A stretch of DNA of 64,000 nucleotides from Narcine bancroftii (Eukaryota), in assembly GCF_036971445.1 (NCBI RefSeq), contig NC_091471.1, positions 132,928,001-132,992,000 of the forward strand. Reading direction: 5' to 3'. Below are positions 7,221 through 62,504 of the stretch, in pieces. The notes under the pieces were generated by a model, which ran no database searches, was not told the DNA's origin, and was given only the letters and a program-made list of their open reading frames with translations. The translations under genes and the position numbers were made by a program. Position 1 is the stretch's first letter; each line of letters opens with the position of its first letter.

Positions 7221-7975
7221 AATGATAGTGATCATATTTGCATGGCCACTAGCAAGGCCTTGATTACAGTTACTGTTTGATTAGACTTGGCTGCCAACAG
7301 GGGGCTGACAGAGAGCAGGAGGCACAGTATGTTTGATCTGTAATGGAGCCTTGCAGCCTCATGGCATGCTTCATGGTGCTGTTTACAACAACTTTAAGGT
7401 AAAGAACCATTTCCTTCATCCATGTGTTGTCAAAGAACTCACACATACAAATATAAAATGAAACATTGTGTCAGAAGTGGGATGAAGGAAATTAAAATGA
7501 AATACTTTAAAAGGTAAAATCTAAAATAAGCAACGGATCAGTGAAGAGAAGCTAACAAAGAGAAAAGTGGAAGGATAACATCCACCAGCAAAACTTCAGT
7601 TGACAGGTAATGTGGCTGAAAGTTCGAACAGATTTAAACAGCATTTTGAATTGTATTTAGTGGCAGTCGGAGTTGATGAGAAAAGTGATAAAGTGAAAGC
7701 GTCAGTTTTCTTAGACGTTGTGGGTGATGAAGCCCTGGAGGTGTATAATAACTTCACATTTGCTGCTGAAGGAGACTAAATGAAATTGGAAAAAATAATG
7801 GAACAGTTTGAGGCATACTGGATACCTAAACGTAATGTGACATTTGAGAGGCCCAGATTTTTCACATATATAGAGGAAATGGAGGAAGGTATTGATCAGT
7901 ATGTGACTGAATTGAGAAACAGAAGCAAAATGTGTGAAAGAAGGCTTGTGTGTAGTATTCCAGATAATAGTCCCC
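7221..7975 (+). mobile_element. Gypsy LTR, tRNA-Leu-type primer binding site and gag fragment
   Basis: LTR-like end ...AACA followed by TTGTGTCAGAAGTGGGAT (7466-7483, close to TGGTGTCAGAAGTGGGAT); gag FELYLVAVG...VGDEALEVYNNF...FEAYWIPKRNVTFER. Confidence 0.78.
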
Positions 7976-8397
7976 TCCATTCTAAACCAATACACTTTTG
8001 CACCAAGTATTCAAACAAATATTGCTTTACAATGAAACTGAAAGTGTTGTAATTAACCTACAATTTTGTTTTACTGTTAACACACATCCAGTTGTAATTC
8101 TTAATTCTTCTCTCACCTGGTGTCCATCAAGGTTTGCAAGCTCACCTCCCTAGAGACTGTCCCCTCTGCAAATTTTGATGTGGGATTTCACGCTGGCTCC
8201 AGCCACCCATGTTCTGGAACCTTCCTTTTCAAGTCTCATCCTGGTCCCGGCCACCCGCATGCCAGAGCCACCAATGACTTTGCCCCTGACCCCAATCCTG
8301 ATCTTCCACAGGCTGGAGCCACTGATCCTCCACTGCTAAATCCTGCCACAATTACCCACAGACAGGTGCTCCCGACACCCCATCAATGCAGGTACAT

Positions 8398-9487
8398 TCT
8401 TTGGCTTGGCTTCGCGGACGAAGATTTATGGAGGGGGTAAATGTCCACGTCAGCTGTAGGTTCGATTGTGGCTGACAAGTCCGATGCGGGACAGGCAGAC
8501 ACAGTTGCAGCGGTTGCAGGGGAAAATTAGTTGGTTGGGGTTGGGTGTTGGGTTTTTCCTCCTTTGTCTTTTGTCGGTGAGGTGGGCTCTGCGGTCTTCT
8601 TCAAAGGAGGTTGCTGCCCGCCGAACTGTGAGGCGCCAAGATGCACGGTTTGAGGCGATATCAGCCCACTGGCGGTGGTCAATGTGGCAGGCACCAAGAG
8701 ATTTCTTTAGGCAGTCCTTGTACCTCTTCTTTGGTGCACCTCTGTCAAGGTGGCCAGTTGAGAGCTCGCCATATAACACGATCTTGGGAAGGCGATGGTC
8801 CTCCATTCTGGAGACATGACTCACCCAGCGCAGCTGGATCTTCAGCAGCGTGGACTCGATGCTGTCGGCCTCTGCCATCTCGAGTACTTCGATGTTAGGG
8901 ATGAAGGCGCTCCAATGAATGTTGAGGATGGAGCAGAGACAATGCTGGTGGAAGCGTTCTAGGAGCCGTAGGTGATGCCGGTAGAGGACCCATGATTTGG
9001 AGCCGAACAGGAGTGTGGGTATGACAACGGCTCTGTATATACTTATCTTTGTGAGGTTTTTCAGTTGGTTGTTTTTCCAGACTCTTTTGTGTAGTCTTCC
9101 AAAAGCGCTATTTGCCTTGGCGAGTCTGTTGTCTATCTCGTTGTCGATCCTTGCATCTGATGAAATGGTGCAGCCGAGATAGGTAAACTGGTTTACCGTT
9201 TTGAGTTTTGTGTGCCCGACGGAGATGTGGGGGCGCTGGTAGTCATGGTGGGGAGCTGGCTGATGGAGGACCTCAGTTTTCTTCAGGCTGACTTCCAGGC
9301 CAAACATTTTGGCAGTTTCTGCAAAACAGGACGTCAAGCACTGAAGAGCTGGCTCTGAATGGGCAACTAAAGCGGCATCATCTGCAAAGAGTCGTTCACG
9401 GACAAGTTGCTCTTGTGTCTTGGTGTGAGCTTGCAGGCGCCTCAGATTGAAGAGACTGCCATCCATGCGGTACCGGATGTAAACAGT
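8398..9487 (-). mobile_element. RTE-clade LINE (AviRTE-like), 5'-truncated, young
   Basis: Open 338-aa frame with LFADDAAL, FTYLG, LRWVSHVSRM and a C-terminal C2H2-like CNRC..H; 3' end TTCGTCCGCGAAGCCAAGCCAAAGAA; near-identical to 58118-59647. Confidence 0.95.
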
Positions 9488-10659: not shown

Positions 10660-11560
10660 CTAGTATCAGGAACCATTTACCTTTCAAGCTTCCTCCACCA
10701 TTTGATAAAATCAGGGCCAATTTCTACCATCATCTTTCTGCACTAACTTCATATCCTTTAGACTTTTAGTTATTAATTTTATCTGCCTCAAATATAATCA
10801 GTAACCCAGCCTTTACAGTCCTCTTGAACTGAGTCTTCGAAGGATCTGGGTGAAGAAATTTGTTCTCTCATAATTCTGAGAGGACAATCCTTTAAGAACC
10901 CTCGATCCTTGAAAAATCATCCAGAGGATAGATTAATCATGAATCTACCCTGTAAGAATTGTGTCTAACTGGAGAATACAAATGCAGAGTTTGCTTAACC
11001 ATTCCAAGAGTGACAAAGCTGCCATCCCGGGAATTGATTTGATAAACCTTTGCTGAGTTCAATTTATCAGAGCTGTATCCTTGCTTAAGCAGGGAGACCA
11101 GACCTGAAAATAATATTGAATACAGTTTCATCTGACCCCCATATAAATGAAGCTAGAAGTCTCCACTTCTGGACGCAAATCCTCTTGCACAAAATCTAAC
11201 ATCACTCTGTCAAGGCTTTTGCTGTAACTGAAATTTCATTTTCAGGTGATGTTAGGATATTTTCATTTGTGGGAAAATCTCACATTAGAAAGCATCATCG
11301 TAGAATAAGAAGGCAAATGTTTATGAATGAGGAATAATTTCTTCTCATTATGGATTGTGAATCATTGGACTCCTTGCTCCAGAAAGCTGTGAAAGATAAA
11401 TACTTGTATATATTCAAAACTGAGACAAAGGGAACCAAAGGTTTTGGCATAGAACATGTCTGTGAATGTGGAATGTTGCTTAGCCATGATTTTATTAAAT
11501 GAGAAAGTAGTTAAGGAGCTGAATGGCCTACTCCTGTTCCTATTTCTTCTGACTTTGTGC
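10660..11560. mobile_element. Old CR1 3'-end remnants in both orientations
   Basis: CR1-type tail GAATGGCCTACTCCTGTTCCTAT at about 11521-11543; degraded reverse copy upstream. Confidence 0.6.
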
Positions 11561-11700
11561 TCTGTAAAGCTTCATTCTCTTTTTCAAGTTTTTTTTAAAT
11601 TTTTAACAAATTACAAAATTATATTTGAAACTATCTCAAAATTTCAACACATTTCTTTTTAATATTGAGTTTTCTAATTAACTCCATATTCTCTGCTGCA

Positions 11701-11800
11701 CCAATCACTGTCCTCAGGGCCGCACAACCAGTATTTTGCCCAACCATGAATTGTTCAGCCTCAGATTATAAATACTGGCGTTAAGCTAATCGGAGACACA
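11701..11800 (+). promoter_or_regulatory. Proximal promoter of the CXC-chemokine-like pseudogene
   Basis: CCAAT 11701-11705, C/EBP-like TTGCCCAA 11736-11743, TATAAATA 11767-11774 about 85 nt before the ATG; paralogous copy at about 30385-30435. Confidence 0.55.
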
Positions 11801-11855
11801 AAAGAAGAACCAAGCTGAATCAAGAAGTCAGAACAGGGAAGATTGGAACCTGAAC

Positions 11856-11919
11856 ATGAACTATAGAGTTACTGTCACACTCCTGCCATGCCTTGGAAAT
11901 TAAGCAGCTTTCTCTGTGT
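11856..11919 (+). pseudogene. CXC chemokine-like pseudogene, exon 1 (signal peptide)
   Basis: MNYRVTVTLLPCLGN*AAFSV+T then GTAAGG: 64 coding nt, phase 1, the exon-1 geometry of CXCL8 and JCHAIN. In-frame TAA at 11901-11903. Confidence 0.62.
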
Positions 11920-12229
11920 GTAAGGAAAAAACCCTGCACCTTCTAATTTACCAACTGCATTGAGTGTCAGCTTCATAGTTATGGAAAACTTGAATTTGGG
12001 ATTCATTAATTAGTAGTTTAAACAGTCATTGATAAAACTTGGTGATGCCAGTAGTTGGCAATAGAGATAAAAAACACAAGAGATAGCCAACAGGTTAGCA
12101 GAGAGCGGAACAGCATTTACATTTATGTCAGTGACCCTTCATAAGAATTGTAAAATTGAGAAAATATATGTGTAATGTTGAAGTGGGTGGTGAGGGAGTT
12201 GGGTAGGTCGAGACAACAAATCAAATGGA

Positions 12230-12630
12230 TCGGAGGTCAATCCACAGGACCATAAGAGTGGCAGAGAGGCTCACTGGATTCTCACTCACCTACATTGACG
12301 TGATCTACTGGGATTGTTGTCTGATGAGGGTGGGCATATCATAGAGGACCCTTTCCACCCTGCACCCAGTATCTTTCAGCTGCTCTTGCCGGGAAAGTGG
12401 CAGTGAGAATGCTGAACAACCAAAGAAACTGCTCACACTAACCAATAGAGACTTTAAAATATACAAACCAATATTTATTTATTTGTTTACTTCTTCTGCA
12501 TATGTATTGTTTGTCTTCATGTGGGTTATGTCTGGTTGTATGTTTGCATGTTTTGGACCAAGGATGGAGAATACTGTTCATTGGATTGTACTTGCAAAAT
12601 CAGTGACAATAAATTTGACTTAGCTTGAAA
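12230..12630 (+). mobile_element. Rex1/Babar-type LINE 3' end
   Basis: Similar to the reverse complement of about 22850-23040; ends AATAAATTTGACTTAGCTTGA. Confidence 0.65.
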
Positions 12631-13584
12631 TGTCTGTCAGAGGATAGAGACCAAGGATGGAGATTTTCTCCAGCAATTTATTTTCATAATGAGCAGATTA
12701 AATTTTGTGTATGTTAAAATACCATCCTGGTACCTTAATAGAAAACTGAGAATTGCCATGCAATAAAAGATGCAATTTTGTGATTACATATTTCATCTCC
12801 CTGCTTTGAGTCCTGCTCATTGTTAAAATTTCAACCAACTCACATGGATCCAATGGGTACAATTCTGTCAATAATGGTGCTGTGATAGAGTACTGAAGGA
12901 GATCATTTGCCTCATCATGCTCTCTCAACTATTCAAAATTTTTTTTTTTATCCGGGGCATTTTGAAAGCCATTCCATTTATTAACCACACCACCCTCAGC
13001 AACCCTCTTTGTCAAATCACCCAAGATGTCAATCAAGTTGGTAAAATCAACAACTGGGTAGAGGAGGACTTGGAGAAGTTCATTTCTTTCCTCACGACCC
13101 CACACTGATGAGGAATGATGAGCCTTCAGTTTAAGGTCGATTCTTCATGACCAAGGTTGCTGAATACATCATCCATCCTGGTACCTTGATGTGAAACTGA
13201 AGATTGTCACACTCTAAAAGGTGCCGTAATCTGAAGATGTTATTTCCATTCTAATCATTCACCACATTAAATAATATTTCCTAATTAAATCAATCAACTA
13301 TGGAAACAGTGATCATGTTTCATCTTGTTCACTTTTATATTACAAAGGTGCACAAGTAAATTATGTATAAGCAGTTCTCAAAATTTAATTTAAAATCCCA
13401 CAATAAGGAGTAATTAAATTGGCACTCACTCGACTTCAAGGAAACTAACATTACTGAGAAAATGGCAATTTTGTTCCTATGGTCAAAACTGGTAATAAAT
13501 TGGATCATGTCCATTGGTCATCTGTATCACGTCTGAAAGAGTGTGTGCAAAAGACAGTAAAAATGAAGAAAAAAGAGATAAACT

Positions 13585-14950
13585 CTTCTTCCAACGTCTG
13601 TGTCTATGCCTACTTCTTCCACCAGGATTCTTCAGCCCCTTCTAAAGCCATCCTCCCACCTTGAACCTGCATCCACCTCTTGTACACCTCATTTTGGCCT
13701 TCTGCCCACAATTAATTTTCACACGTTCAACTTCCACTTAGACATAAACTTCTCAACTTCACACTCCCATGACTTATCTAATCCCAACCACTCAGAACAT
13801 TCTTCCCTCCAATCTCTCCCCACCATAACCTCACTATAAAGATGCATATGTGTGGTGTTGTTGTGACACACTGATCTCTGCCTTGTCAAGGCCAGACGAC
13901 AGCTCTCAGACAACTCTTCTTAGTTACCTCTTGAAAGAACCAGGCAATCACCACAAACAAAGAGCCCCACCAAAAATCATAAAGCTGTCACTTCTGGTCA
14001 TCTCCCGTCCTCATCCTCCAACATTATTGTTTCCAACCCCACACTGTCCGCTTCTACCTCCTACCCAAGATCCATAAACCCATTTGCCACACAAGACCCA
14101 TTGCTTCCATGTGATCCTGCCCCACCAAACTAGTACATTGACTCCATTTCATTGCACATGGTCCAGTCCCTCCACACCTACATCCACGATATCTCATATC
14201 CTTTCCATTACATCCACAACTTCCAGTTCCCCGAACTCAGCTGCCTTATCTTCACCATGGACATTCAATCGCTCTACACCTCTATCCCCCATACTGAAGG
14301 CCTCAAAGCTCTTCATTTATTCTTAAAAAACAGACTGATTTCTCTCCCTCACCTCCTACACCCTCCTCTAGTAGGCAGAACTTATCTTCACCCTCAATAA
14401 CTTCTCCTTTCATTTATCCCACTTTCTTCAAGTTGACTTTAGTCTGTCATATGGCTGATCAAAATTCACCAACAGTAGAAATTGCCTAGCACCCCTTATA
14501 GTCAGAAAAGAGAAGCAAAAGAGACTCCCCCAGAGTCACTGGTGGTCCAAGGATTAGCCACGCCCACAGCCTCAGCAGCCCACAGACTTCAATCGTGACC
14601 TGAGCCACAGATCGAAACCTCCGATACAATCCTGAAGACTTCAGCACCCTTTAGACCCTCTCACATCCCAGTTCCAATACCTGATGCCCCTGCAGCCAGA
14701 CTCGAGCCAGTCTCCAGCAGTCCACAGCCTGGTGTGAATCCTTCTACCAGAGTCACTAGCAGCACACTAACTGTGGCATTTTCTTGCCTCAAGTCACCAA
14801 CAGCCCACCATCTGTATGTTCTTCAGCCACAGAGCCCCTCACTGGTCCACTCCCATGGGGTATCCATGGGTACCCACATGGGCCTCAGCCTTTTTGTTGG
14901 TTATGTGAAGCAATCCATGCTAAAATTCTCCAACTCTTCCTCCGCTTCTT
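13585..14950 (+). mobile_element. Penelope-like element RT relic, split by a repeat at about 14430-14850 that is related to 53125-53880
   Basis: LIFTMDIQSLYTSIPHTEGLKAL, LTLNNFSF, GVSMGTHMG...LFVGYV. Confidence 0.8.
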
Positions 14951-16969
14951 TTTGTTTGAATATTTTATTTAAGTTTTTAAAGCCAAACAGGCAATCACCA
15001 AAAACAAAGAATAAAATTAATTCAGAGTAAACATAATGATATGTCATACATGATGTCTATAATCCCACCCTCCCATGAAAAGTTAATAAACAAGAAAGTC
15101 TCAAATAAAAAGATTGAAGAGAAGAAGGAAGAGAGAAAAGAAAAAGGAAAAAGAGAAAGAGGGATTGTCAGGGATCCATCTTCTACCCCACAAGTTTCAC
15201 ATTTTCACAATTTACCTGAATCTCAAGGGGATACTTGTGCAGGTCTCGTGGGTGAGATAGGGCACAATTAAAAATTTGCACTTACATTTTGTAGATATGG
15301 CTGTCATAATTGTAAGAAAATGTCATACTTATTTCTTAGGTTATAGGTAACCTTATCAAGGGGAACACAACTATGCATTTCCGCATTCCAATGGGCTACA
15401 CCTAGATGTGAGTCAGACTTCTAAGTAACTGCTCTACATTTTCTGGTGACTGCCAATGTGATCTTGACAAACCTCATTTTAGGTCTTACACCAGCAATAT
15501 TCTCCAGTAAGAATAGTTCTGGGTTCTGTGGAAATTAAATTCCAGTAATTTTCTCTTGGTTTCCCCAGATCCACCCAAAATGTGTTTACCTTGGAACATG
15601 CCCAAGTTGAATGTAAAAAAGTTCCTATCTCCTCATTGCACCTAAAGCATTGATCTGAAATGTCTGATTTTTAATTTTTTTTGCAGTGTGAGATATAGCT
15701 GGTGCAAAAAATTATATTGCACTAATCTGTATCCTATATTTATTGTGTTTGTCATAGAGTCCTGACATAAATCAGACCAGCTTTGGTCACCAATATTTAT
15801 ATTCAAGCCTGATTCCCATCTCGGTCTTGAATTATGTTCCCCCATTTGAAGTGATAAATACATTTCTTTGTGTTTCCCTTATGAATCAGAGTCTCCATAT
15901 CACTCCACTTATTGTCCAGCCCAGTTTATCCCTTTAAGTATGCTCTTAACTGAAAATAGCAGAATATTGCATTGTTAGCAATACCATATTTATGTTTTAA
16001 TTGTTCAAAAGACATAAGTTATCCCTGCTCATAATAATCCTCAATAAACCTGATTCCTTTTCAGGACCAGGTATCCAAAATCTTATTACACATTGTTAAG
16101 GGTATAAGTCTATTCTGAGTCAGGGGTGTTTTTGGAGATAGTCCCCCTTAGTCCCCATATGCAAATTTATTTTGCTCCAAATATTAATTATATGTTTTAA
16201 CAAGGGGGCTTCTTTCTCACCAGGTATTAATTTTGAGTCCCATTTATATGTAAAATCCTCTGCTATGTTTTCTCCCACTTTATGCAATTCTATTTTCACC
16301 CATGAAGACTTATCTCCTCTCTCAATAGGGAGATAGGAAATTTAGTCTGGGTTGCCCAATAATAAATTTTAACATTTGGGAGTTGTCAGCCTCCCGGTTC
16401 ATATTTCCATATTAATTTTTCTATGGAGACTCTAGTCATCTTACCTTTCCAGATAAATTTTCTGACATGTTTAGTTAGTTACTGAAAAAAACCTTTGAGG
16501 CAATGGATTGGGCAGTGTCTGAAAGAGATATTGGACTCTGTTCAAATCTTCTTCAACATTGTTAAGAAAGGGGAGATCATTTAATTTGTATAAATTCTGT
16601 AAATTATTATTTTTTACTCCCTAAATATTTTATCTCGTTGAGTGACCATTTAAATTGAGTATTTCTTTGACATTGACTATAATCCCCATCCATAAGCGGC
16701 ATAATTTTGCTTTTATCCTAATTTATTTTATAACCTGAGACATTCCGATACTCTTTCAATTTTCAGTACAATTTCTGTAAGGAAGTTACTGGTTCTGTCA
16801 AATATATCAATACATCATATGCAAATAAATTAATCTTATATTCTTCCTGGTTAATCCTGAATCCCTTTATGTCTGGATCTCGCCGCATTGCTTCCACCAA
16901 CAGTTCTATAGCCAAAATAAAGAGAGCCAGAGAGAGTGGACATCTTTGTCAACTTAATCTAGTTAATGG

Positions 16970-19900
16970 TGTGACCAGTTATGTTTTTTTTTGTTTATAG
17001 GTATGTTTTAAATAAGATAAATTGTGGCAGGTTTTTTAGTGTAGGTCACATACAAAAACTTCAAAACAGATCTCATTTTAAATGCTGGAGCTCTGCTCAA
17101 ATCACACAGACCTAGTGCTTTACAAAAACTTTGAAGAATGCCTATAAGGACTTCACAAATAGGTGTTAATTGGACATGCTGTGGAGCAATGGATTATTGT
17201 TTTGGAAAGCAACAGATGAACAAACTCGGAAGATTAGGTTCAGAGCCACAGCCCATTTGAGTGTAGTGGGTGTTCTAAGGGGGTCATTTGGTTTTGCAAG
17301 CAGAGAGGGTCAAACAGGTTTTTTTCTCTGAGTGAGAGAGAGAGAGAGGGAGAGAGAGTTTGAAAGAGAAAGAATTCAGTTCTACAGTTCAGCTGCAGCA
17401 GCTGGAACTGAAACATGATAAGCTGCCAAGGTTGTGGAAAAACCCCATTTTGAAGATGGGTTGTGAGTTCTTAGTTTAGCCTGGTCAAAGTCCTTGTGGT
17501 CCATACAAGAGGAGAGGACTAGCTGCCTAATGTTTCACTTGAAATAAGGGAAACAAAAAGAACTCTGTAGTGACCTGAAAGGAAAAGGTTACCATCTAAA
17601 AACCCTGATGGAGCAAGTTTCTTTGGCAAGACACTGAAGTGGCTGATCTGAAGGAATCAGTTGTGAGTGTCCAACGAACAACAAATCTGTCTCGCAAAAC
17701 CAACAAGAACCTTCCTGAGCAGCAACCATTTTAAGTTCTGTGAATAGTTTAAGAATTGCCTGCAACCAAGGAACTTGCAGGAATGAGAAGTGAGATTGGA
17801 CTGTGAATCCTCACTTCTCCTTTCATTCATCCCACTTTCTTCAACTTTCTTCAAGTTAACTTTAGTCCTCAATTTTCTGAATTTATACAAACATTACATA
17901 CACGTGCACTTAGAATTAAAAGGGTGTTAAGTTAGGTAAAGTTAAGTTAATAGTAATAAGTTTGAGTTTGATCCTGTTCTCATGTTTAAAGATAATTAAA
18001 AGCAACTTTTGTTTAAGTAACAATTTGTCTTGGTGAATTTCTATTGCTGCTGGGTCTTGGGGTCCTCTGGGCTCATAACATTGGGGGCTTATCTTTTCAA
18101 ATTGAAAATTGGAGTTTTGGAATCATAAATGTTTGAAGTTACATAGAAACAGAAAATAGGTGCAGGAGTAGGCCATTTGGCCCTTCAAGCCTACACTGCC
18201 ATTCAATATGTTCATGGCTGTTCAGTACCCAGTTCCTGCCTTCTCCCCATACCCCCTGATCCCCTTAGCACAAGGGCCAAATCTAACCTACTCTTAAATA
18301 TTGACAAGGAACTGGCCTCAACTACTTCCTGTGGCAAAGAATTCCACAGATCTACCACCCTCTGAAAGAATAATTTTTTCCTCATCTCAGTCCTAAAACA
18401 CTTCTCCCTTAACCTTAAACTGTGACCTTTGGTTCTAGTTTTTTTCCCAGCATTGGAAACAACCTTCCAGCATCTAGTCTGTCTAAACCCTTAAGAATTT
18501 TATATGTTTCTATAAGATCCTCCTCAATCCTCTAAATTCCAGAGTATATAAACCCAGTCTATCCAACCTTCTTTTATATGCAAGTCCTTCCATCCCTGGT
18601 ATCAGTCAAGTGAACTTTCTCTGCACCCCTTCCATGACGCCCCTCTTGCTATGAATACAAATATACCATTTGCCTTCCTCACTGCCTGCTGCACCTACAC
18701 GCCCACTTTCAATGACTGATGCACATCCAAGTCTCTCTGCATCTCCCCTTTTCATAAACAGATACCATTTAGATAATAGTCCTCTTTCCTGTTCTTATTT
18801 ATTGGTTGATTGGTTTTTCCAAGCTAATTTAAAGCTTTTGTGTGTGTAGAAAACACCAGCAATGGATGTTGATAAACTTTTGTCACAACCATCTACTGCA
18901 GAGCTGCAGAGGAAGAAAAAAAGAGGAACTGATGGTTATTTCTAAGGCATTAAAGCTGAATAAAGTCAAGCATTGGATGAGGAAAATACAAATACAGAGA
19001 ATTATAGTGAAATATATAGGTGAGGGAAAATTTGTTGATAAAGACTTAGAAAAATTTCCGGAAGATAGGTCTGTTCAATTGCAGTTGAAATTGGAGAAAT
19101 TAAGGGTGTTGAAAGAAGGAGAGAAACAGAACTTTGAACTGCAGAATTTTGATGTATAACTCGGTACTTCTCATGAACCAACTTTGATACTTACTGACCA
19201 CAATCCCCTGGTGTTTTTGAATAAAATGAAGAATAAAAAGAGAAGATTGTTAAACTGGAGTTTAATGTTGCAAGAATATAATCTGCAAATTAATCTTATC
19301 AGAGGTACAAAAAATGTGATGGCAGATTGTTTGTCACGATGTTAAAATTGATCATGTATAGAAATATATACTCTCAACATTGGGTTACATTGTTATAACA
19401 TGTTATATATTGTATATTGTTATCATTTTAGTTTTATAAAGTCAGTTTAATTATAACTGAATTTTAACTCGAGAGTTAAAATTCCTTTGTATGGGGAAAG
19501 TGTGACAGATTATGTTATATTTTATTTTGTATATGTTTTAAAGGAGGTAAATTGTGGCAGATTTTTTTTAGTGTAGGTCACATAAAAACAATTCAAAACA
19601 GATCTCATTTAAAATGCTGGAGCTCTCTCAAGCCAGACAGTCCAGGCTCCTAGTGCTTTACAAAAACTTTGAAGAATGCCTACAAGGACTTCACAAGTAG
19701 GTGTAGAGCAATGCTGTAGAGCAATGGACTATAGTTTTGGAAAGCAACAGATGAACAAACTTGGAAGATTGGCTCCGGAGCCGCAGTCTGTCTGAGTGCA
19801 GTTGGCTGTTTTAAGAGGATCGTGTGCTTTTGCAAGCAGAGAGAGTCAAACAGGTTTTTTTCTCTGAGAGAGAGAGAGGGAATTCAGTTCTACAGTCAGC

Positions 19901-20534
19901 AGCAGCAGCAGCTGGGACTAGAACAGGACAATCTGCCAAGGTTGTGGAAAAACTCCATTTTGAAGATGGGTTGTGAGTGCTTAGTTCAGCCTGGTCAAAG
20001 CCCTTGTGGTCCATACAAAAGGAGATGGCTGGCTGTATTTCACTTGAAATAAGGGAAACAAAAGGGAACTCTGTAGTGACCTGAAAGAAAAAGGTTACCA
20101 TCTAGAAAACCCTGATGGGAAATTTTCTTTGGCAAGATTCTGAAGTGGCTGATCAGAAGGAATTAGTTTGTGGGTGTCCAGCGAACAACAAATCTCTCTC
20201 TGAAAACCGACAAGAACCTTCCTGAGCCGTAACTATTTACCTTTCAAACACCAAAGCCCGGTGAACTTCATAAATGTTAAATTCTGTGCATAGTTTAAGA
20301 ATTGCCTGCAACCAATGAACTTGGAGGAGTGAGAAGTGAGATTGGACTGTGAATCAAAGAACATTTCTGAACATATACACACATTACAAGGGGGTTAAGT
20401 TAATAGTAATAAGTTTGAATTTGATCCTGTTTTCATGTTTAAAGATAATTAAAAGCTACTTTTGTTTAAGTAACCATTTGTCTTGGTGAATTTTCTATTG
20501 CTGCTGGGTTTTGGGGTCCTCTGGGCTCATAACA
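16970..20534 (+). mobile_element. Gmr1-like Gypsy LTR element, internally deleted; LTRs 16970-18080 and 19501-20534
   Basis: TGTGAC...TAACA LTR pair; 4-bp TSD ATGG (16966-16969, 20535-20538); tRNA-Pro-like PBS TTGGGGGCT at 18081; gag start about 18862 fused to RNase H (TDHNPLVFL...WSLMLQEY...NVMADCLSRC*), which ends shortly before the purine tract and 3' LTR. Confidence 0.9.
18140..18800 (-). mobile_element. CR1 3' end nested in the leader of the LTR element
   Basis: ACATAGAAACAGAAAATAGGTGCAGGAGTAGGCCATT is the reverse complement of a CR1 tail. Confidence 0.8.
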
Positions 20535-22759
20535 ATGGAAATGGTGGAGAAATTTGTCAGTTAGTTACAATTTTGGCTTTAGATTCATAATATAATGCCC
20601 TAATTCAAATCTTTTCAGCATTTAAATATGAAATCCCATTCCAGTCTATCAACTGCTTTTGCTACATCCAGGGCCACAGCTATACTCAAATCACTTCTCA
20701 TTTGGGCCAAATGACTTACATTAATTGGCCTGTTTACATTAGCAGCAGACTGTCTGTTTGATCCATATTTATTTATTTTGCCAAAATTTTCACCAATCTG
20801 TTTGCCAAAGCTTTGGCAATAATTTTATAATCTGGATTCAATAAGGAAATAGGTCTAGAAGATGACAGTTTCAATGGATCCCTATCTTTTTTTAGGTATC
20901 ACTGTAATTATTGCCATTGAAAATGATTCTGGGAGAGTATATGTCTCAACTGCCTGATTGAACACTGCCATAAAGAGAGGTATCAAAAGATCCTTAAATT
21001 CTTTATAAAATTCAAGGGGAAACCCATCCTCCCCTGGAGTCTTGTTGACTTGCATAAACTCAATGCCAACCCTATCTCCATTTGAGTGAAGGGGGGACTG
21101 GGTTCTTCCTGTTTTTCTTAATCTAAATTTGGAAGTTCCAATTGTGATAGGAACTCTTCAATTTTATTAATATCTCCTTGAGATTCTGATTAATATAATG
21201 TAGAATAAGATTGTCCAAAAGCCTCATTAATTTCTTGCAGATTATGTCCTTTTTGTATCTATTTTAACCATATTGTTTGTTCTTGAGACCTGTTCAGCTT
21301 TCAACTGCCAAAAAATGACCTTATGGGCTCTTTCCCCTAGCTCATAGTACCTTTGTTTAGTTCTTAATATTGCTTTTTCTGTCTTATATGTTTGTACTAT
21401 ATTCTGCTTGAGTTTTTTATTAATAAGTAATCTACATTTTTCTTCAGAACCCCTTTGCTAAAGCTCTTTTTCCAAATAAAGTATCTCCTTTTCTAATCCT
21501 TCCACCTCCTTTGTGTATTCTTTCTTAATCCTTGATGTATAACATTATTTGTCCTCACAGATATGTTTTTAAAGCATCCTGTATAATAAATTTATTGGTA
21601 GTTGTATTACAGTTGGTCTCACAGAACATCTCAATTTGTCTCCTATAAAATCACAAAACTCTCGTCTTCTCAACAACAATGAATTAAAGTGCCATCTCGA
21701 AGTTGTTTTTTGTTTGTCTGGCATTGAGATTGTTAATACTAGAGGTGAATGATCTGATAAAAAAAAGTTTTGCTTTGTATTCAGCCTCCATTATCCTACC
21801 CTGCAACTGAATTGGTGCCAAAAGATAAATGTATCCTAGAGTAGGAATTGTGCCTATTAGAATAGAAAGAATAGTCCCTCTCCCTTGGATGAGATCTACT
21901 CCAGACATCCATTAAATTCAATTCTCTTATTAATACCAAGGTAGCTTTCACCACCTTTGTCCTAACAACTGCCCTTGTTGATTTATCTAGAACCAGATCC
22001 AGACAAAAATTAAAAGCCCCTCCACTTAAGATGTTTTCATGTGCATCTGCCAATTTGAAAAAAGTTTCTTTAATAAAAATTCTCCAGCACTTTTGAGTAT
22101 TAAGGTGAACAAGAAAGCTTCAGAATTTTGATAGAGTGACAACAATCATGGAAGGTTTAGAGAGGATAAATTCAGAAAAAAACAGATGGTGTGAGAAGAC
22201 TTTGTTCAGCAGAGAAAGAGAACTCTAATCTGGGAATGGTGGATGTCAAGTGTTCAGATCCTTTCATAGGAAGATGGATAGTGACTTGAAAAAAATTGTT
22301 TGGCTACAGGGAAAAGTGGAGAAATGGAAATTAACAGATTACTCTGCAGAATCTGGCATGAACTTGTTTGGCAACTGGTTTCCACCTTTGCTTCATCAAT
22401 CCTGCCTTTATACTTTATGAGTAGAGACTTTGCCAAAGTTATCTTCGTACATTGTCTCCTAATAATAATAGTTGATATTGGCCCAACTGCTGCATGCTCA
22501 GTCTGTGTAAGAAGATCATCTTTTGGATTCAATTCGAGAGCACATAATTTCTGCTGGTGCTCCTGCTTGTAACTGCAAGAGTCCTGTACTATTGGAGTCA
22601 CTGTCATTTAAATGAGACAGTTGAAACAAGTTCCCATTTTCTCAGCTGATATGTGATCACGTGATATATTGTGGAAGCTCTCAGAGTTCTGTTTTTATTT
22701 TACTGAAGTCTAAAAAACAACTGATCTGGTCATTTTTCTCTCATCATTTTAGCAGTAGA

Positions 22760-23890
22760 CGGTTCATAAATCAATTGTGCATTACGTATAGTTCATCAGT
22801 CGTTCAGCAGTCTCACTGCCTGTGGGAAGAAACTGTTCCTCAGCGTGGTGGTTCATCTCTTTCTGAACGGGACGAGCTGGAACATGCTGCATGGGAGGTG
22901 GTCGGTTTCCTTCCTGATTTTGAGAACCTCTTTAAACAATGATCCCAGTAAATCACACCAGTAGAGGGGAGGGAGAGCCCAGTGATATTCTCCTTCACTC
23001 TTATAATCCTGTTCATTGATCTCTGACCTGATGCTCTGCAGCAACTGTACCAGACTGTGATGAAGCCAGCGTGATCGAGCTCCTGTAGAAAGTTCTCAGG
23101 ATGATGGCTGCTAATCTTGCCTGCCTCAATCTTTTCAGGAAGTGAAGTCACTGTTGTGCTTTCCTGACAAATAAAGATATGTTGTGTGTCCACGATAAGC
23201 CACTTCTTTAGTGGCCTATGAGGAACATGGTGCTTTCTCTCCACTACCAAGCTATTAATGTGTAGTAGAGGGTAGTTGTCCCTGGTCCTCTTGAAATCCA
23301 CAATCATCTCCTTCACCTTGTCCACATTGAGACTCAGGTTGTTATTCTCAAACCATTTCACAAGAAATAGTAGAGTGATTCATCATTGTTGCTGATGAGA
23401 CCAACTACTGTCATGTCACCTGCAAACTTGATGACTCTGTTAGAGCTTGATCTGGCAAAGCAGTCGTGGGTCAGCCACATGAATTGGAAGGAGTAGGTTG
23501 AGCACACTGCCCTGAGGTGTGACAGTGCTCATTGTGATGGTGCTTGAAGTTCTGCTACCATCTGTGGTCTTTCTGTTAGGAAGTGCAGAATCCAGTTAGG
23601 GAGAGGGGTGTTGAGTCCCAGCGAGGACCACTTCTCCGCCAGCCTCTGGGGAATGATCGCATTAAATGTCGAGCTGAAGTCAATGAACAGCAACTTGGCA
23701 CATAAGACTCATTCTCCAGGTAGAACAAGATGGAATGGAAAGAAAAAGCTGTAGCATCATCAGTGGAACACTTCCATCTCTAGGCAAACTGAAATGGGTC
23801 CAATGTCTTTGAGAGGTGCGCTTTGATGCGTTCCATCACCAGATACTCAAAGCTTTCCATATTGGTGTTGACAAGTGCCACAAGTGCGGG
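22760..23890 (-). mobile_element. Rex1/Babar-clade LINE RT and 3' region
   Basis: KFAGDMTVVGLI, WFENNNLSLNVDKVKEMIVDFKR, ITVWY. Confidence 0.85.
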
Positions 23891-24566
23891 CTCTCCTGCA
23901 ACTCTATTCATTCATCAATGTGCCGCAGAACAAAACAGAAGGTAGGGTTACACAGAGAGACCAGTTCAAATGGAGTAAGAGCAACAGTACCTTAAACGCT
24001 GATAGTGGTAAGAAAGGGTCTGTCCTTAAACCTGGTGATGCGTGATTTCACAAGATTCAAGGACAATGTTTTTTTACTGTTGGGAGGAGGGCACAATTAG
24101 TCTGGCTGAGGTGAGATGAGCCCTTCACTAAGTTGGCTGATTTTCTAAGGATTTAGATACTTAGATGGAGTCAATGAAGGAAAGGGGATTTCTGTGATGT
24201 TGCATGGTGCATTCACAATTCTGAGTTTATTGCAGTCCCATACCATGCAGCGATGCACCCTCACATGATACTCTGATGGTACTGTTGTACTTGAGGGAAG
24301 ATAGGATAATGCCAAATGTCCTCAAGTTTCTGAGATTGTAGAGGCAATTCTTTATATATAATAGTGAAGACAGAAAATTCAGTAGCGAATTCAGTGCTAA
24401 GTCCAGAGACTGTAATGTGCACAGATGAAAACGAGATATCATTCTCCATGCTACAATTGACCTTTTTGCAATGGTGCCAAAGGCTATGGTGAAGGGCCAC
24501 ACTTTGAACACTGAATACAGTAAACATTTATTAAAGAACAAATTTTTATATCCAATTTTCTTACAA

Positions 24567-24724
24567 CTGCTCCCTGTAAATAACAATGAGAACATGCGAT
24601 ATCTCCTTTAAGTCACGATGAGAACATGCAAAGTCAATGCATACAATATAAAAAGAGAAAAGCACCATGGAGAATAATTTATGACACTAACAAGTACCAC
24701 AAGTTGCATGCATACAGAGGTCAT
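24567..24724 (+). pseudogene. CXC chemokine-like pseudogene, exon 2
   Basis: Reconstructs to AP-VNNNENMR/Q-(S)QCIQYKKRKAPWRIIYDTN / STTSCMHTEV-AT|GT. AGT-CAA-TGC at 24632-24640 is one change from C-Q-C; third Cys at 24705; TEVI ends at a phase-2 GT (24725). Lesions: acceptor reads TTACAA instead of TTACAG, a 12-bp duplication with filler, and frameshifts. Confidence 0.68.
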
Positions 24725-24822
24725 GTAAAAATTGTTTGTGTATTTACATTTTCTTGTTTATATTTCAATGGGAAAGTGCTGATAATATGGAGAAATTGGG
24801 TGAATGACAGTTATATCTCCAG

Positions 24823-24970
24823 ATCACCACCAAAAAGTAAATCTTACCAAAAAAATTAACATTTTTAATGAACCAAAATGAAGCTCTCACTCTTTCATGG
24901 GCAAACTTCTTGGGTGAAGGAACTTGTTGACAGTTCACTGACAAATTCTACAATGTCAGATATATTTTGA
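24823..24970 (+). pseudogene. Possible exon 3 relic of the chemokine pseudogene
   Basis: Follows a 98-nt GT..TCTCCAG intron; the phase-2 frame contains stops but leads to QTSWVKELVD (TGG at 24911), like the chemokine WV helix; fourth Cys not recognisable. Confidence 0.35.
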
Positions 24971-25726
24971 AGGGCTTGATTGCTGTAATAATATCCTGAT
25001 GTTAAAGATACACGCTCTTTCTTGCTTTAATTATGGAAGTGAAATTGCAACTCCTTTTTAAATTATCCTTCAAATTAGATGGCTTTCTAAAATTAATATG
25101 TTTGATCTTAATTCTAATGCTGAATCTCCTCTGTTAAGCAAACACCTTCATCATAAACCGTAGAATAAGGATTACAGCAAATGATTCAGACAATATGTCT
25201 CCATAATAATCCAAAAGATAAATTCAATTACTCCCTCCTTCGGATTGTCACCTCCCATCTACCCCACCCTCTTCCCATCCCACCAAACTCCATCTCCATT
25301 TCAACAATTCTCTGAAAGCATCCAAGTTTCTCTGCTTTAAAAACTTCTCCAACTCTCTATTGTAAATTACCGTTTAATCTGCTATCATTTCATTTTCAGA
25401 TCTACCACTCCGCACAACAATTTGTTTCCTTGCCTGGTTTCTGGTGCTAGAATTCTGCATCTGCTGGTTACTGTGTCTTGCATTGCTGGAAACAATTCCA
25501 TCTTACTTTCTCCATGATATGGTTCATGATATTGAATACACGCTTTAAATCTACCCTTAACACCATCTGTCCTGGCAAAAGCAATCCAGCATTTTCCATA
25601 TTCTCAATAAAACAGAAATTCCACAAACATAGTTTCATTCTCATAAATCTGCTCTGCAGGGATTTGATTTGGACCTGTGATATGGTGCCAAGAAATGGAA
25701 AAAAAACTTCAGCTAAAAGCTTACCT

Positions 25727-27024: not shown

Positions 27025-28700
27025 AGACCATAAGATATAGGAGCAGTAGCAAGCCATTTGGCCCATTGAGTTCACTCCATTATGAGCTGATCCAACTGCT
27101 CAACCCCACAGCCACCTGTGGTAGTAAATTACAGAGGTTCATCACCCTGCTCCAAAATAAATTTCTCCCTGTCGCCATTATAAATGGGTACCCTTTAATC
27201 CTGAAGTTCTGCTCTCTAGTACTAAACTCTTCTAAAATGGAACACAACTTTTCCACATCTACTCCACTCAGGTACTTCAACATTAAAAATGTTCCTCTGA
27301 AGTCCCCCTTATTCATCTGAACTCCAAAGAATACAGTCTAAAAGCTGTCAAATATTCTTCATGTGCTAACCCCTTCATTCCAGAAATCATTTTTGGGACT
27401 CTTCTCTGTACCCTCTCCAATGCCAGCCCAAAACTGTACCCCATATTCCATGAGGCCTTACTAGTGCCTTATGAAGCCCCAACATCACATCCTTGCTCTA
27501 ATATCCTATTCCTATAGATATGAATGCCAGCACTGCATTTGCTATCTTCAACACCAACTCAACCAGGAGGTTAACTTTTAGGGCAGTGGTTCTCAACCTT
27601 TCCTTCCCATCCACATACCACTTTAAGTAATCCCTATGCAATCATTGGTTTGTGATTAGTAAGGGATTACTTAAGGTGGTATATGGATGGGAAGAGAAGG
27701 TTGAGAACCACTACTCTAGACCCCAATGTTACTGAAATATTTTCCTTGAGATAAATTGTCATTGGCCCATTTTCTTTGGAGTTATGAAACTGCGCACGTA
27801 ATGAATCAATGAGGTACAATTAAAGCAGTGGTTTTCAAACTTTTTCTTTCCACCCACATACCACCTTAAGCAATCCCTTACTAATCACAGAGTACTTATG
27901 GCATAGGGAATACTTGAAGTGGTATGTGAGTGGAAAGCAAAAGGTTGAGAACCACTGCTTTAAGGTATCCTGCATGAGGACTCCCAAGTCCCTTTGCCCC
28001 TCTGAATTTTGAATTTTGTCCCATTCAAATTACCTTCTGCCCTTTTATTCATTCTACCAAAGTGCATGACCATACACTTTCATTTGCCACTTCTTTGCCC
28101 ATTCTCCTAATCTAAGTCTTTCTGCAGCCTCTCCTTTCCTCATCACTATTGCCCCTCCACTCGTCTTTGTATCATCTGCAAACTTAAATACAAAGCCCTT
28201 TATTCTACAATCCAAATAATTAACATACAACATGAAAAGAAGTGCCCACAACACCCCTGCGGTACACCACTAGTAATCGGTAGCTAACCAAAATAGGATC
28301 CCTTTGTTCCCATTCTCTGTTTCCTGCCAATCAGCCAATGCCTTACCCATGCTAGTATCCTTCCTGTAATTCCATGGGCTCTCATCTTGTTAAGCAGCCT
28401 CATGTTTGGCACCTTGTTAAAGGCCTTTAGAAAATCTAAAAATACAACATCCCATGTCTATCCTGCTTGTGGCTTCCTCAAATATTTGCAGTAGGCTTGT
28501 CAGGAAAGTTAGACCATTCAGCTTTCCAAGCATCTTCTCTCTGGTGATCATGACTGCACTCTCTTCTTTTCCCTGACACCCTTAACAATCAGTTATACTG
28601 CTGATGTCTCCCACAGTGGAGACTGATGCAAAATACTTATTCAGTTCCTCTGTCATTTCCTTGTCTCGAATTATAATTTCTCCAGTGCCATTTTCTATCA
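27025..28700 (-). mobile_element. CR1 LINE 3' part
   Basis: YVNYLDCRIKGFVFKFADDTK, LGEWAKKWQMK; CR1 tail (reverse complement) at about 27025-27065. Confidence 0.85.
27584..27957. mobile_element. Composite hAT MITE made of two ~130-bp palindromic units
   Basis: Outer TIRs CAGTGGTTCTCAACCTT and AAGGTTGAGAACCACTG; units at about 27584-27713 and 27826-27957; degenerate 8-bp TSD TTTTAGGG/CTTTAAGG. Confidence 0.85.
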
Positions 28701-30279
28701 GTCCTAATATATAAAACACACACTCTCTCTCTCTCTCTTAATAAAATAAAAGATTTTTTGGTATTCTTTTTGATAGTATTCAATTCCTTCCTTATGTTCC
28801 CATATTGGTGAGCTGGTGTGAGAAGTGATGAGCTCCAGTGAGTGACAAAGGTTGATTTGGCACCATAAGATTGAGTTGAATGGGCAATTATACCTTTCCT
28901 GATCTAATGACCTTCTATATCGAAGAGCAGAGGACTGCACCAAATCCAGCATTCTATCCACTGCTCTTGCCTTCTCAGAGATCATATTACCCTGCCATTC
29001 ACTTTTTCTCCGCCAGTACAGTCAAACTTTTTAATCCAGTGACATTAGGACCTGGCCATTGCCGGACCACAAAAAGTGCCGGAAAATAGAAAAAGCACAG
29101 AAACTAGTTGTCAAAAGTGCAGTAGGTGACTCGATCAGACACATTTTCTAAGCTAAAAGGATCAAATAAGCCACAAATAAAATTGGGGTTAGTTTAGCAG
29201 TTAGCACAATTCCTTTACAGTGCCAACGATCGAGACTGCAGTTTGAATCCCATGCTGTAAAGAGTTTGTACCAATGGCAGGTGCTGGTCTACAGTGTGCC
29301 AGATTTAAGAGGTTCAATTTGTAATAGGACAGGGGATATTAAATAAACACAAGAACTGCTGGTGCTACAATCTTGAGCAAACAATAAGAAGCTAAAGTGA
29401 CTCAGAAGGTCAGGAAGCAATATTGACTCGCCATTTCCTCATTGGATTCTGCCTGACCCCCTGGGTCCATTCAATTGTACGTTGTTTGCACGAGGAGTAT
29501 TAAATAATATGGATACTTGGCCATATCATTTTAAGCTATACTCAATCATGCACTGCAGGAAATTAGCCTGCAGATCAACTATCAACTTGCTAAATTATCT
29601 GTATGAAAAATGAAATGTTTCAATAAACTGCTTTTAAATCCAATACATGTATGGGTGTGAGAAAAAGACAAAAGTGGGGTAAATTCAATTAGAGTCATGG
29701 AGTTATACAACACAGAAACAGGTCTTACAGCCTACCATGTCCTTCAAGTACTCATCTATATTAAGCTCAAGGATGAGGTCTTGACCAACTATTGTCTTTC
29801 AATCCCATTAATTTCTCAGATACTCATTTCTTTGATTTCTTCATTCACCTGGACCTGTGCTTCTCTTCTACTTCTGGGAGGTTTTTTTTGTGCCTGCTCC
29901 CATAAAGGCAGGCAAAATATTTGCACAACTTCTCTCCCATGTCCTTATTCCAATGTGAATGAACCACAGGGACTGCAGCTGTAGTTTTAAAAGTTCTTTA
30001 TTCAGCAAGACAAGCAGACATTCAGTAGAATCAATCTCTCTTGGAGACGCTCCAGAGAAAAGCTGGAAGTTTCTGAAGTACACAAAAATAACAAAGTAAA
30101 TTAGCATATTTTCAGTGGTGTCTCTACTCACCAGTATCTCTTCTTTCACAGTGATGAACTATTTTTATTTCTGGCATTAATATTTTTTAAATCAAAATTC
30201 AACATTTCACTACTATCACATTATTTTGCCACTTAGCCCTTTTTCTGTCATGTCATTCCCCTTTTTCAGTTTCCTTTTC

Positions 30280-30570
30280 TGTAACAAATTACTTTGATAT
30301 CATCTGCAAATTTCAACATCTAGTTACTTTGTCTTACTTTTATCAATGTTTTCTCTTGCGCCAGAACTTGGTATTGTCGTTGCAAAACCCTTATTTGCCC
30401 AACCTGACTTCATCCTCAGATAGTACTGATCCTAAGCAAAAAAGCAAACAGAGAGATAGCCAGCCTGAATTAGAAAGGCGGGATGAATTGCAATGTAACA
30501 GTTGAAAGGAAAGAATGAGTGCACTGCAATTTTTAAATTGAGTGTCAATTTATAAATAGCTGTCCCTTTC
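30280..30570 (+). pseudogene. Second chemokine-like relic: paralogous promoter and truncated exon 1
   Basis: Colinear with 11600-11990 (TAACAAATTAC, AAATTTCAACA, TATTTGCCCAACC, TTCATCCTCAGAT, CTGAAT, ATTGAGTGTCA). ATG 30483 gives MNCNVTV versus MNYRVTV; the TATA box and the rest of exon 1 are deleted. Confidence 0.55.
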
Positions 30571-52469: not shown

Positions 52470-52533
52470 ATGAAGAGCAATCAAATGCTGAGGCCTTTGG
52501 CAGCAATTCTGCTTTTCACAGTCCTTGTAGCAG
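52470..52533 (+). CDS. JCHAIN: Immunoglobulin J chain, exon 1 (signal peptide)
   Basis: MKSNQMLRPLAAILLFTVLVA+G then CAG|GTAAGA donor; 64 nt, phase 1; splices in frame to 62378. Confidence 0.85.
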
Positions 52534-62377: not shown

Positions 62378-62504
62378 CTGATTCTGAAAAGCACCTTCTA
62401 GTTAAATCAAAATGTAACTGCCTGACTATGACATCCAAAACAGTCGTGAATGTATTGCCTTCTGGTGCACGTGTGGAACAGCTTATAAGAGATATAAAAA
62501 TTAC
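62378..62504 (+). CDS. JCHAIN: Immunoglobulin J chain, exon 2
   Basis: T30-ACAG acceptor and AC|GTAAGT donor; 127 nt, phases 1 and 2. (A)DSEKHLLVKSKCNCLTMTSKTV...VEQLIRDIKIT aligns with the mammalian J chain segment VLVDNKCKCARITSRII...IVERNIRII. Confidence 0.93.

What the first reader, a model, noticed from the sequence alone, without database searches (positions are those of the whole stretch)
11701..24970. Hidden CXC-chemokine pseudogene on the same strand upstream of JCHAIN
Seen: a TATA box, a 64-nt phase-1 signal-peptide exon with one stop (11856-11919), a relic exon reading (C>S)QCIQ...PWRII...SCMHTEVI that ends at a phase-2 GT (24567-24724), a 98-nt intron, and a WVKELV helix relic. 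Cys2 to Cys3 is 64 nt, so a 5- or 8-nt deletion from the usual 23-24 codons would explain the frameshift. Intron 1 is inflated to 12.6 kb by retroelements. Established: CXCL genes and JCHAIN share exon phases and an exon-2 CXC motif, and JCHAIN is proposed to be a co-opted CXCL linked to the chemokine cluster (Kawasaki et al., PNAS 2024). Inference: this is a dead chemokine about 28 kb from JCHAIN that annotation would probably miss, and its intact orthologue in related species could be the closest chemokine neighbour or relative of J chain.
Basis: partly seen in the sequence, partly recalled or inferred. Interest (0 to 1): 0.85.

Follow-up and report, generated by a model that had tools for sequence, protein, structure and literature searches.

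The report
Decayed chemokine gene copy upstream of JCHAIN
About 27.5 kb upstream of the shark J-chain gene, on the same strand, lie what are probably the broken second and third exons of a CXC-chemokine gene copy whose intact-looking relatives elsewhere in the genome are expressed; this fits published synteny, so it adds to the known picture but is no surprise.

Summary
Exon 2 has no AG acceptor at the stated start, and its two motifs lie in different reading frames. Direct homology tests were blank: Pfam IL8, PDB and two protein-database searches found nothing. The ESM Atlas gave chemokine-fragment clusters as its nearest neighbours, which is a lead only. In Monte Carlo runs, an exon-2-like constellation appeared about 0.015-0.03 times per 64-kb strand. 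The real window has exactly one, at the claimed site.

The main evidence came from laying public contigs on the region. At least three paralogous loci in the same genome are colinear with 24493-25500. In one paralog, the 30 letters upstream of the WV block read in frame N-K-I-C-L-H-R-S-M-(P)-W-V, which is the Cys4-to-WV spacing of CXCL8. In the likely RNA runs, paralog contigs lie on the exon-3/3'UTR blocks but not on the intron-2 block.

I judge a dead CXCL-family copy (exons 2-3 plus 3'UTR) likely, at about 0.7. Exon 1 at 11856 and the 12.6-kb intron are unverified. Kawasaki et al. 2024 already place CXCL8-like genes upstream of shark jchain, so this is a new member of a known kind.

The parts
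11767..11775 (+).
   Evidence: Sequence read. It lies inside a 270-nt island (11571-11841) that has one in-window copy at 30252-30485 (nhmmer E=1.6e-8). That copy has a gap at the TATA.
11856..11919 (+). Candidate exon 1 (64 nt, phase 1, in-frame TAA at 11901-03). Unverified.
   Evidence: The pattern is not distinctive: 15 comparable candidates in the window and 116 without the TATA requirement. There is no significant similarity to unit B over this stretch.
22843..23911 (-). LINE reverse-transcriptase fragment inserted in the putative intron 1
   Evidence: ORF list. tblastn matches to other in-window LINE copies. Pieces with the FQFA motif. Multi-copy loose ends at 24052-24309 in the DNA run.
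24493..24566 (+). 3' end of intron 1, with a decayed acceptor (AA at 24565-66)
   Evidence: 24493-24548 matches paralog contigs (X5 record 7, X1 record 4; 5 differences in 56 nt). The paralog runs on as CCCAATGTCGTTCTTTTACAG|ATGTTTCTG, where this locus has ccaattttcttacaa|ctgctccctg.
24567..24724 (+). Exon-2 relic (158 nt). It carries two stops, a 32-nt tandem duplication, Cys1>Ser (AGT 24632), Cys2 (24638), a frameshift between 24678 and 24704, Cys3 (24705), T-E-V and a split AT|GT donor in phase 2.
   Evidence: It is the only locus in the window that meets an 8-of-9 feature model. ESM Atlas nearest clusters carry PF00048. No Pfam or PDB hit.
24725..24822 (+). The acceptor is unverified.
   Evidence: 24711-24798 matches paralog DNA contigs (X1 records 3, 4, 6). 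No paralog contig of the RNA? runs lies there. An X5 contig of this locus runs unspliced across 24574-24889.
24823..24970 (+). Exon-3 relic. It has three stops (24857, 24866, 24869), Leu in place of Cys4 (24890-92), W-V-K-E-L-V at 24911-28 and a TGA stop at 24968-70.
   Evidence: 24909-24999 is 88% identical to an expressed paralog whose preceding 30 letters read N-K-I-C-L-H-R-S-M in the Trp frame.
24971..25630 (+). 3'UTR-like tail, with AATAAA at 25606-11
   Evidence: Blocks 25059-25102, 25129-25157, 25319 onward and 25426-25500 match paralog contigs. The spacing is the same in the DNA and RNA? contigs. Sequence read.
52470..52533 (+). JCHAIN exon 1 (64 nt, phase 1), the landmark for synteny
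   Evidence: Exon 2 is at 62378-62504 (127 nt, K-C-N-C-L).

Best explanation
Window 24567-24970 (+), with its tail to about 25630, is the decayed 3' two-thirds of a CXC-chemokine gene copy: exon 2, intron 2, and a last coding exon with 3'UTR. The copy arose by duplication within the CXCL cluster that lies upstream of jchain in cartilaginous fish. It cannot make a chemokine. The exon-2 acceptor is lost (AG>AA). There are stops in exons 2 and 3. Cys1 is Ser and Cys4 is Leu. A frameshift separates Cys2 from Cys3. A LINE sits in intron 1. The locus is at most weakly transcribed and is not spliced at the proposed intron 2. Its relatives elsewhere in the genome are expressed and look intact at the two places that can be read. 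Shown here: the lesions, the paralogy and the colinearity. Inferred: that the paralogs are chemokines, and where exon 1 lies.
For: 1. Paralog P1: contigs of one locus (X1 record 3, X5 record 9, X7 record 25, sharing the same differences) match 24711-24771 (DNA contig only), 24909-24999, 25129-57 and 25426-25500. The 30 letters before 24909 read N-K-I-C-L-H-R-S-M in the frame of Trp 24911. That places Cys-Leu seven residues before Trp-Val, as in CXCL8 ELCLDPKENWV. My estimate of the chance of this is 0.005-0.02.
2. Paralog P2: X5 record 7 and X1 record 4 match 24493-24548. It ends 29 nt later, as expected for a k=31 graph branch at a splice junction.
3. Contig placement: in the RNA? runs, paralog contigs lie on exon-3/3'UTR blocks and none lies on the intron-2 block, although the DNA contigs of the same paralogs carry that block. 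Within X5, contig depths are 4.9, 188 and about 8000, against 4.5-15.7 for the same loci in DNA. So X5 behaves as RNA.
4. Chance: the exon-2 constellation is expected 0.015-0.03 times per 64-kb strand, and none of the simulated loci also had WV. The real window has one hit, at the claimed place. The reversed window has none.
5. ESM Atlas on the 45-aa exon-2 piece: the two nearest clusters both carry PF00048 IL8 (scores 0.82 and 0.78), and all ten of the best family-bearing hits agree.
6. Synteny (PMC10801876): in sharks, jchain lies downstream of cxcl genes, next to CXCL8-like cluster A. Those genes have Glu and WV motifs and phase 1-2 introns.
7. An independent sample (X5) reproduces the lesions between 24574 and 24889.
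Against: No piece gives an IL8 (PF00048) hit at E<=10. No PDB chemokine appears at E<=10. Two word-indexed searches on relic pieces found no relatives, and the WV piece has no Atlas hit. No paralog contig aligns at 80% or more to the body of exon 2 (24561-24611 and 24663-24710 stay at single-copy depth), although the flanking intron blocks do align. The paralogs are known only from 30-letter loose ends and block coordinates, so none could be translated or scanned. The Monte Carlo criteria were set after seeing the candidate. Contigs show presence, not absence, and the RNA label of X5 and X7 is the tool's guess. Exon 1 has no support.
Confidence: 0.7

Rival explanations
1. Chance resemblance in repeat-rich intergenic DNA. 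On this reading the motifs QCI, C..TEV|GT and WV are coincidences picked out by a reader primed by JCHAIN, and the paralogous contigs are old interspersed-repeat copies, some sitting in UTRs of abundant transcripts.
For: There is no Pfam or PDB chemokine hit. Exon 1 is non-distinctive. A 32-nt slippage duplication builds the N-terminal part of exon 2. The donor and WV lie in segments with other genomic copies, while the exon-2 body is unique. 24023-24350 is clearly multi-copy, next to a LINE. An X5 contig is unspliced across the proposed intron.
Against: It needs several independent coincidences. The exon-2 constellation is expected about 0.015-0.03 times per 64-kb strand. A paralog shows in-frame Cys-Leu-x5-Trp-Val, and another shows an intact acceptor at the homologous site with the contig ending 29 nt later. 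In RNA? runs the paralog contigs lie on exonic but not intronic blocks. The Atlas points to IL8. The position and strand match published synteny. No transposon protein or in-window copy covers 24400-25500.
Confidence: 0.2
2. A real pseudogene, but of an expressed, spliced small-protein gene family that is not a chemokine. The CXC-like strings would then be incidental.
For: Paralogy, colinearity and expression are shown only at DNA level. No IL8 profile hit exists for any piece.
Against: The exon phases (1 then 2), the split codon after T-E-V, Cys2-to-Cys3 spacing, Cys4-to-WV spacing in the paralog, a short C-terminal helix-like tail, the Atlas neighbours and linkage to JCHAIN all point to the CXCL family.
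Confidence: 0.08

Closest known systems
CXCL8-like genes of chondrichthyan 'cluster A', upstream of jchain (Kawasaki et al., PNAS 2024, PMC10801876)
   Same: Same strand as JCHAIN and upstream of it. Phase-1 and phase-2 intron positions match. A CXC site lies in exon 2. Glu is present in T-E-V, and WV opens the C-terminal helix.
   Different: This copy is dead: lost acceptor, stops, two of four cysteines replaced, and a frameshift. No ELR is present (it reads E-N-M-Q-S). The open frame after WV runs to a stop with no sign of a third intron. Paralog DNA and RNA? contigs keep the same spacing there, so the family may have three exons rather than four.
Human CXCL8 (IL-8), from my own knowledge of the sequence and gene structure
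   Same: CQCI resembles SQCI. C-A-N-T-E-I-I with the split Ile codon at the exon-2 end resembles C-M-H-T-E-V-(AT|GT). ELCLDPKENWV resembles the paralog's KICLHRSM(P)WV. Exon 1 has 64 coding nucleotides in both.
   Different: Similarity is too low for any profile or pairwise hit. The Cys2-Cys3 gap is 64 nt here against 72 nt in CXCL8. The relic's exon 2 is 158 nt against about 136 nt.
JCHAIN of the same window (exon 1 at 52470-52533, exon 2 at 62378-62504)
   Same: The 64-nt phase-1 first exon, a CXC site in exon 2 (K-C-N-C-L) and a phase-2 end of exon 2, as Kawasaki et al. describe.
   Different: No sequence similarity between the relic and JCHAIN exons or flanks was detected. Nothing marks the relic as closer to J chain than any other CXCL.

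Membership tests
CXC chemokine (Pfam PF00048 IL8) | Significant match to the IL8 domain profile | tested here: not met
hmmscan of nine stop-free pieces at E<=10 gave no IL8 hit. PDB phmmer at E<=10 gave no chemokine. Only separate pieces were searched.
CXC chemokine (Pfam PF00048 IL8) | Four conserved cysteines with a C-x-C motif | tested here: not met
   Cys2 (24638) and Cys3 (24705) are present. Cys1 is Ser (AGT 24632). The Cys4 position reads Leu (24890-92), by alignment to the paralog's TGT. This is as expected for a pseudogene, so the locus is filed as derived from the family, not as a functional member.
CXC chemokine (Pfam PF00048 IL8) | Gene structure: intron 1 in phase 1 at the signal-peptide boundary, and intron 2 in phase 2 in the codon after [TV]-E-[IV] | tested here: inconclusive
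   The phase-2 GT donor after T-E-V is present at 24725. The acceptor at 24565-66 is AA, but AG in a paralog. Exon 1 is unverified. The intron-2 acceptor is unverified, and an X5 contig is unspliced there.
Chondrichthyan CXCL8-like cluster A | Linked to jchain, upstream of it and in the same orientation | tested here: met
   The relic is at 24567-24970 (+) and the JCHAIN ATG at 52470 (+).
Chondrichthyan CXCL8-like cluster A | ELR motif, conserved Glu and WV motif | tested here: inconclusive
   Glu (24717-19) and WV (24911-16) are present. There is no ELR before the CXC site (E-N-M-Q-S-Q-C).
CXC chemokine gene family of this genome | Homology to intact, expressed family members | tested here: inconclusive
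   Three colinear paralogs match at 84-91% in blocks. One reads C-L-x5-W-V in frame and one has an intact acceptor.

The most novel reading that the evidence does not exclude
The relic is the remnant of the CXCL lineage most closely related to JCHAIN. If so, an intact orthologue in another cartilaginous fish would be a transitional form between chemokines and J chain. A lesser possibility is that this shark's JCHAIN-adjacent CXCL family has lost intron 3 and is a three-exon variant.
Probability: 0.04. Interest if true: 0.8.

Novelty: new member of a known kind. Interest (0 to 1): 0.4.

Why it matters
If it holds, this is the CXCL-derived sequence nearest to JCHAIN within this window, with no intact chemokine gene in the 52 kb upstream of JCHAIN. 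It also shows that the cluster next to JCHAIN has undergone duplication and decay. That adds detail to the published synteny argument that J chain arose from a neighbouring CXCL gene, but it does not test that argument. Nothing links this copy to J chain more closely than any other CXCL. For annotation, it is a pseudogene that gene predictors would miss. It also points to at least three expressed paralogs that are worth locating.

Tried and rejected
- Pfam scan of nine plus-strand pieces: no IL8 hit. Ten minus-strand pieces over 23783-25026 gave no transposon domain.
- PDB phmmer with the 89-aa and 44-aa pieces returned only unrelated noise hits.
- The search for homologous proteins with the exon-2 piece found no candidate. 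With the minus-strand 126-aa open frame, nothing scored. With a two-row alignment of the exon-2 and WV pieces, nothing scored.
- ESM Atlas on the WV piece gave no usable hit.
It returned only an unrelated 1715-aa protein.
- Kawasaki's datasets are not held as text.
- Rfam on 10-32 kb found nothing. TRF found nothing.
- A regex scan found no intact C-x-C exon anywhere in the window and no better 'CLxP..W' exon 3.
- I first read the paralogous contigs as evidence that the donor and WV sit in transposon-derived repeats, and put the chemokine reading at about 20%. Translating the loose ends reversed that.
- The apparent MNYRVTV / MNCNVTV match between 11856 and 30484 is not significant at DNA level and was dropped.
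- A suspected 114-nt and a suspected 70-nt internal duplication were not significant.
No tree was built because no intact chemokine sequence could be obtained.
Full report
**What is in the sequence**

The window is transposon-rich vertebrate DNA. It holds LINE and Gypsy-like open frames and two N gaps, which I left untouched. JCHAIN exon 1 is at 52470-52533 (+): 64 nt, phase 1, GTAAGA donor. JCHAIN exon 2 is at 62378-62504: 127 nt, reading ...K-C-N-C-L..., ending in phase 2.

- A TATA box lies at 11767.
- ATG 11856 to 11919 is 64 nt with one in-frame TAA and a GTAAGG donor.
- S-Q-C-I-Q and P-W-R-I-I lie in one frame.
- S-C-M-H-T-E-V plus AT|GTAAAA lies in another frame and ends at 24724.
- 64 nt separate the Cys2 and Cys3 codons.
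- GT..AG bounds 24725-24822.
- WVKELV is at 24911-28, and the frame then runs to TGA at 24968-70.

- 24567 follows AA, not AG, and the phase-1 frame from there hits two stops.
- A 32-nt tandem duplication (24573-97 / 24605-29, 20 of 24 matches, above all 200 shuffles) lies inside exon 2.
- The proposed exon 3 has three stops and no Cys4.

**Direct homology tests**

These were blank. No stop-free piece hits PF00048 at E<=10. No PDB chemokine appears at E<=10. Word-indexed protein searches found no relatives.

These blanks exclude only fairly strong similarity. HMMER's filters drop matches whose per-family P is above about 1e-5, and the pieces are 16-45 residues long. The ESM Atlas put the 45-aa exon-2 piece nearest to two clusters of short chordate proteins that carry IL8 (scores 0.82 and 0.78). 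The tool's own calibration makes that a lead only. The WV piece gave nothing.

**Chance**

Exon 1 carries no information. There are 15 TATA+ATG+phase-1-donor candidates with at most one stop in the window, and 116 without the TATA requirement upstream on the + strand.

For exon 2 I scored nine features:
- Cys1, Cys2 and a hydrophobic residue after Cys2;
- Cys3, then x-x-[TVIA]-[EQ]-[VIL];
- a split [AG]T codon followed by a GT donor.

I also required 60-84 nt between Cys2 and Cys3, allowed one frameshift, required open frames, and allowed at most one miss. Markov simulations gave 0.06 loci per 64-kb window on both strands and 0.015 per strand. None of the 6 simulated loci had WV[KRQE] within 400 nt downstream. 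The real window has exactly one hit, at the claimed site, with WV. The reversed window has none. The criteria were set after seeing the candidate, so the true P is several-fold larger.

**Public contigs**

Contigs of the source sample (X1) reproduce 24000-25500 exactly. A second sample (X5) reproduces 24574-24889 and 24915-25144 with one SNP (24709 T>C), so the lesions in that span are not assembly errors. The X5 contig runs unspliced across the proposed intron 2. A closely related organism (X6) is about 99% identical where it covers the stretch, which is too close to be informative.

Many other contigs match parts of the stretch at 80-92% identity. I first took these for transposon copies, because 24023-24350 is clearly multi-copy and adjoins a minus-strand LINE. 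At that stage I put the chemokine reading at about 20%. Reading the loose ends changed that.

- **Paralog P1** (X1 record 3; X5 record 9 at depth 188; X7 record 25; all share the same differences). It matches 24711-24771 (DNA contig only), 24909-24999 (11 differences in 91 nt), 25129-57 and 25426-25500. The spacing is identical in the DNA and RNA? contigs. The 30 letters directly before 24909 read, in the frame of Trp 24911, N-K-I-C-L-H-R-S-M. The next codon begins with C and is completed by 24909-10. So Cys-Leu sits seven residues before Trp-Val, the CXCL8 spacing (ELCLDPKENWV, from my own knowledge). This locus reads L-F-H-G-Q-T-S-W-V at the same codons, with partial nucleotide identity (TTT CAT GGG against TTG CAT CGG). 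So Cys4 is lost here.
- **Paralog P2** (X5 record 7, X1 record 4). It matches 24493-24548 and continues CCCAATGTCGTTCTTTTACAG|ATGTTTCTG, where this locus has ccaattttcttacaa|ctgctccctg. The contig stops 29 nt after that AG. This is what a k=31 graph does when an unspliced path rejoins a spliced one whose upstream exon ends in G. This step is my inference.
- **Paralog P3** (X1 record 6; X7 record 26 at depth 677; X5 fragments at depth 7000-8400). It matches 24740-24798 (DNA contig only), 25059-25102 and 25319 onward. Its loose ends remain alignable by eye to the neighbouring window sequence.

In the RNA? runs, paralog contigs lie on the blocks from 24909 onward and none lies on 24711-24798, although the DNA contigs of the same paralogs carry that block. 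This fits an intron beginning at 24725 and an exon plus 3'UTR from about 24909.

Two caveats apply. Contigs show presence, not absence, and the RNA label is the tool's guess. However, within-run depths of 4.9, 188 and about 8000 for loci that are all near single-copy in DNA are hard to explain otherwise.

No paralog contig aligns at 80% or more to the body of exon 2. That is the main observation against the reading. It could reflect fast evolution of the mature peptide together with the indels in this copy.

**Synthesis**

Four lines agree on a decayed duplicate of an expressed CXCL-family gene covering exon 2, intron 2, the last coding exon and the 3'UTR (AATAAA at 25606):
- position and strand relative to JCHAIN, which match the published shark arrangement (jchain downstream of cxcl genes, beside CXCL8-like cluster A);
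- the rare exon-2 constellation;
- the Atlas lead;
- the paralog evidence.

I put this at about 0.7.

Exon 1 at 11856 and the 12.6-kb intron remain unproven. The 270-nt island at 11571-11841 has one copy at 30252-30485 (nhmmer E=1.6e-8). That similarity does not extend significantly over the exon, and the island abuts a dispersed LINE fragment at 11308-11571. The open frame from WV to the stop, and the equal DNA and RNA spacing in P1, suggest that the family lacks a third intron.

**Limits**

The representative search, spent on JCHAIN exon 2, found no J chain. No intact chemokine sequence could be obtained, so no profile test or tree was possible.

**Novelty**

Kawasaki et al. (PMC10801876) already show CXCL8-like genes as the upstream neighbours of chondrichthyan jchain. 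A dead copy between them is a new member of a known kind. Nothing found here ties it specially to J chain.

Noticed in passing
window 24573-24597 and 24605-24629: A 32-nt tandem duplication (84% over 25 nt; 20 of 24 matches, above all 200 shuffles) inside the exon-2 relic. It is probably replication slippage after the gene died.
   Followed up: partly
window 24709: T>C difference seen both in a second sample of the same organism (X5) and in the closely related organism B (X6). It is probably a shared polymorphism or the ancestral state.
   Followed up: no
window 11571-11841 and 30252-30485: A 270-nt island with two same-strand copies 18.7 kb apart (nhmmer E=1.6e-8). Its nature (promoter duplicate or repeat fragment) is undecided.
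   Followed up: partly
window 16968-18127 and 19499-20589 (also 2022-2503): About 1.1-kb direct repeats 2.5 kb apart (nhmmer E=2.8e-198), with a third partial copy near the window start. They look like an LTR pair or a recent local duplication inside the putative intron 1.
   Followed up: no
window 27566-27973: This stretch matches its own reverse complement (nhmmer E=1.3e-50), so it is a roughly 400-nt palindrome or inverted repeat.
   Followed up: no
window 14423-14865 and 53171-53588: The same dispersed element (E=6e-34) occurs upstream in the putative intron 1 and inside JCHAIN intron 1.
   Followed up: no
window 62378-62504: JCHAIN exon 2 (127 nt, ADSEKHLLVKSKCNCLTMTSK...). A phmmer search of its 41 residues against 1.84 billion representatives found no J chain, only an unrelated 1715-aa protein at E=4e-4.
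   Followed up: partly
window 25059-25102: A 44-nt block that matches contigs at very high depth in the RNA? runs (about 7000-8400 in X5, 677 in X7). It belongs to a very abundantly expressed paralog (P3) whose identity should be checked.
   Followed up: partly
window 24574-25234: Low-depth contigs of two RNA? runs cover this locus itself, contiguously with the genome. This suggests weak unspliced transcription of the pseudogene, or DNA carry-over.
   Followed up: no
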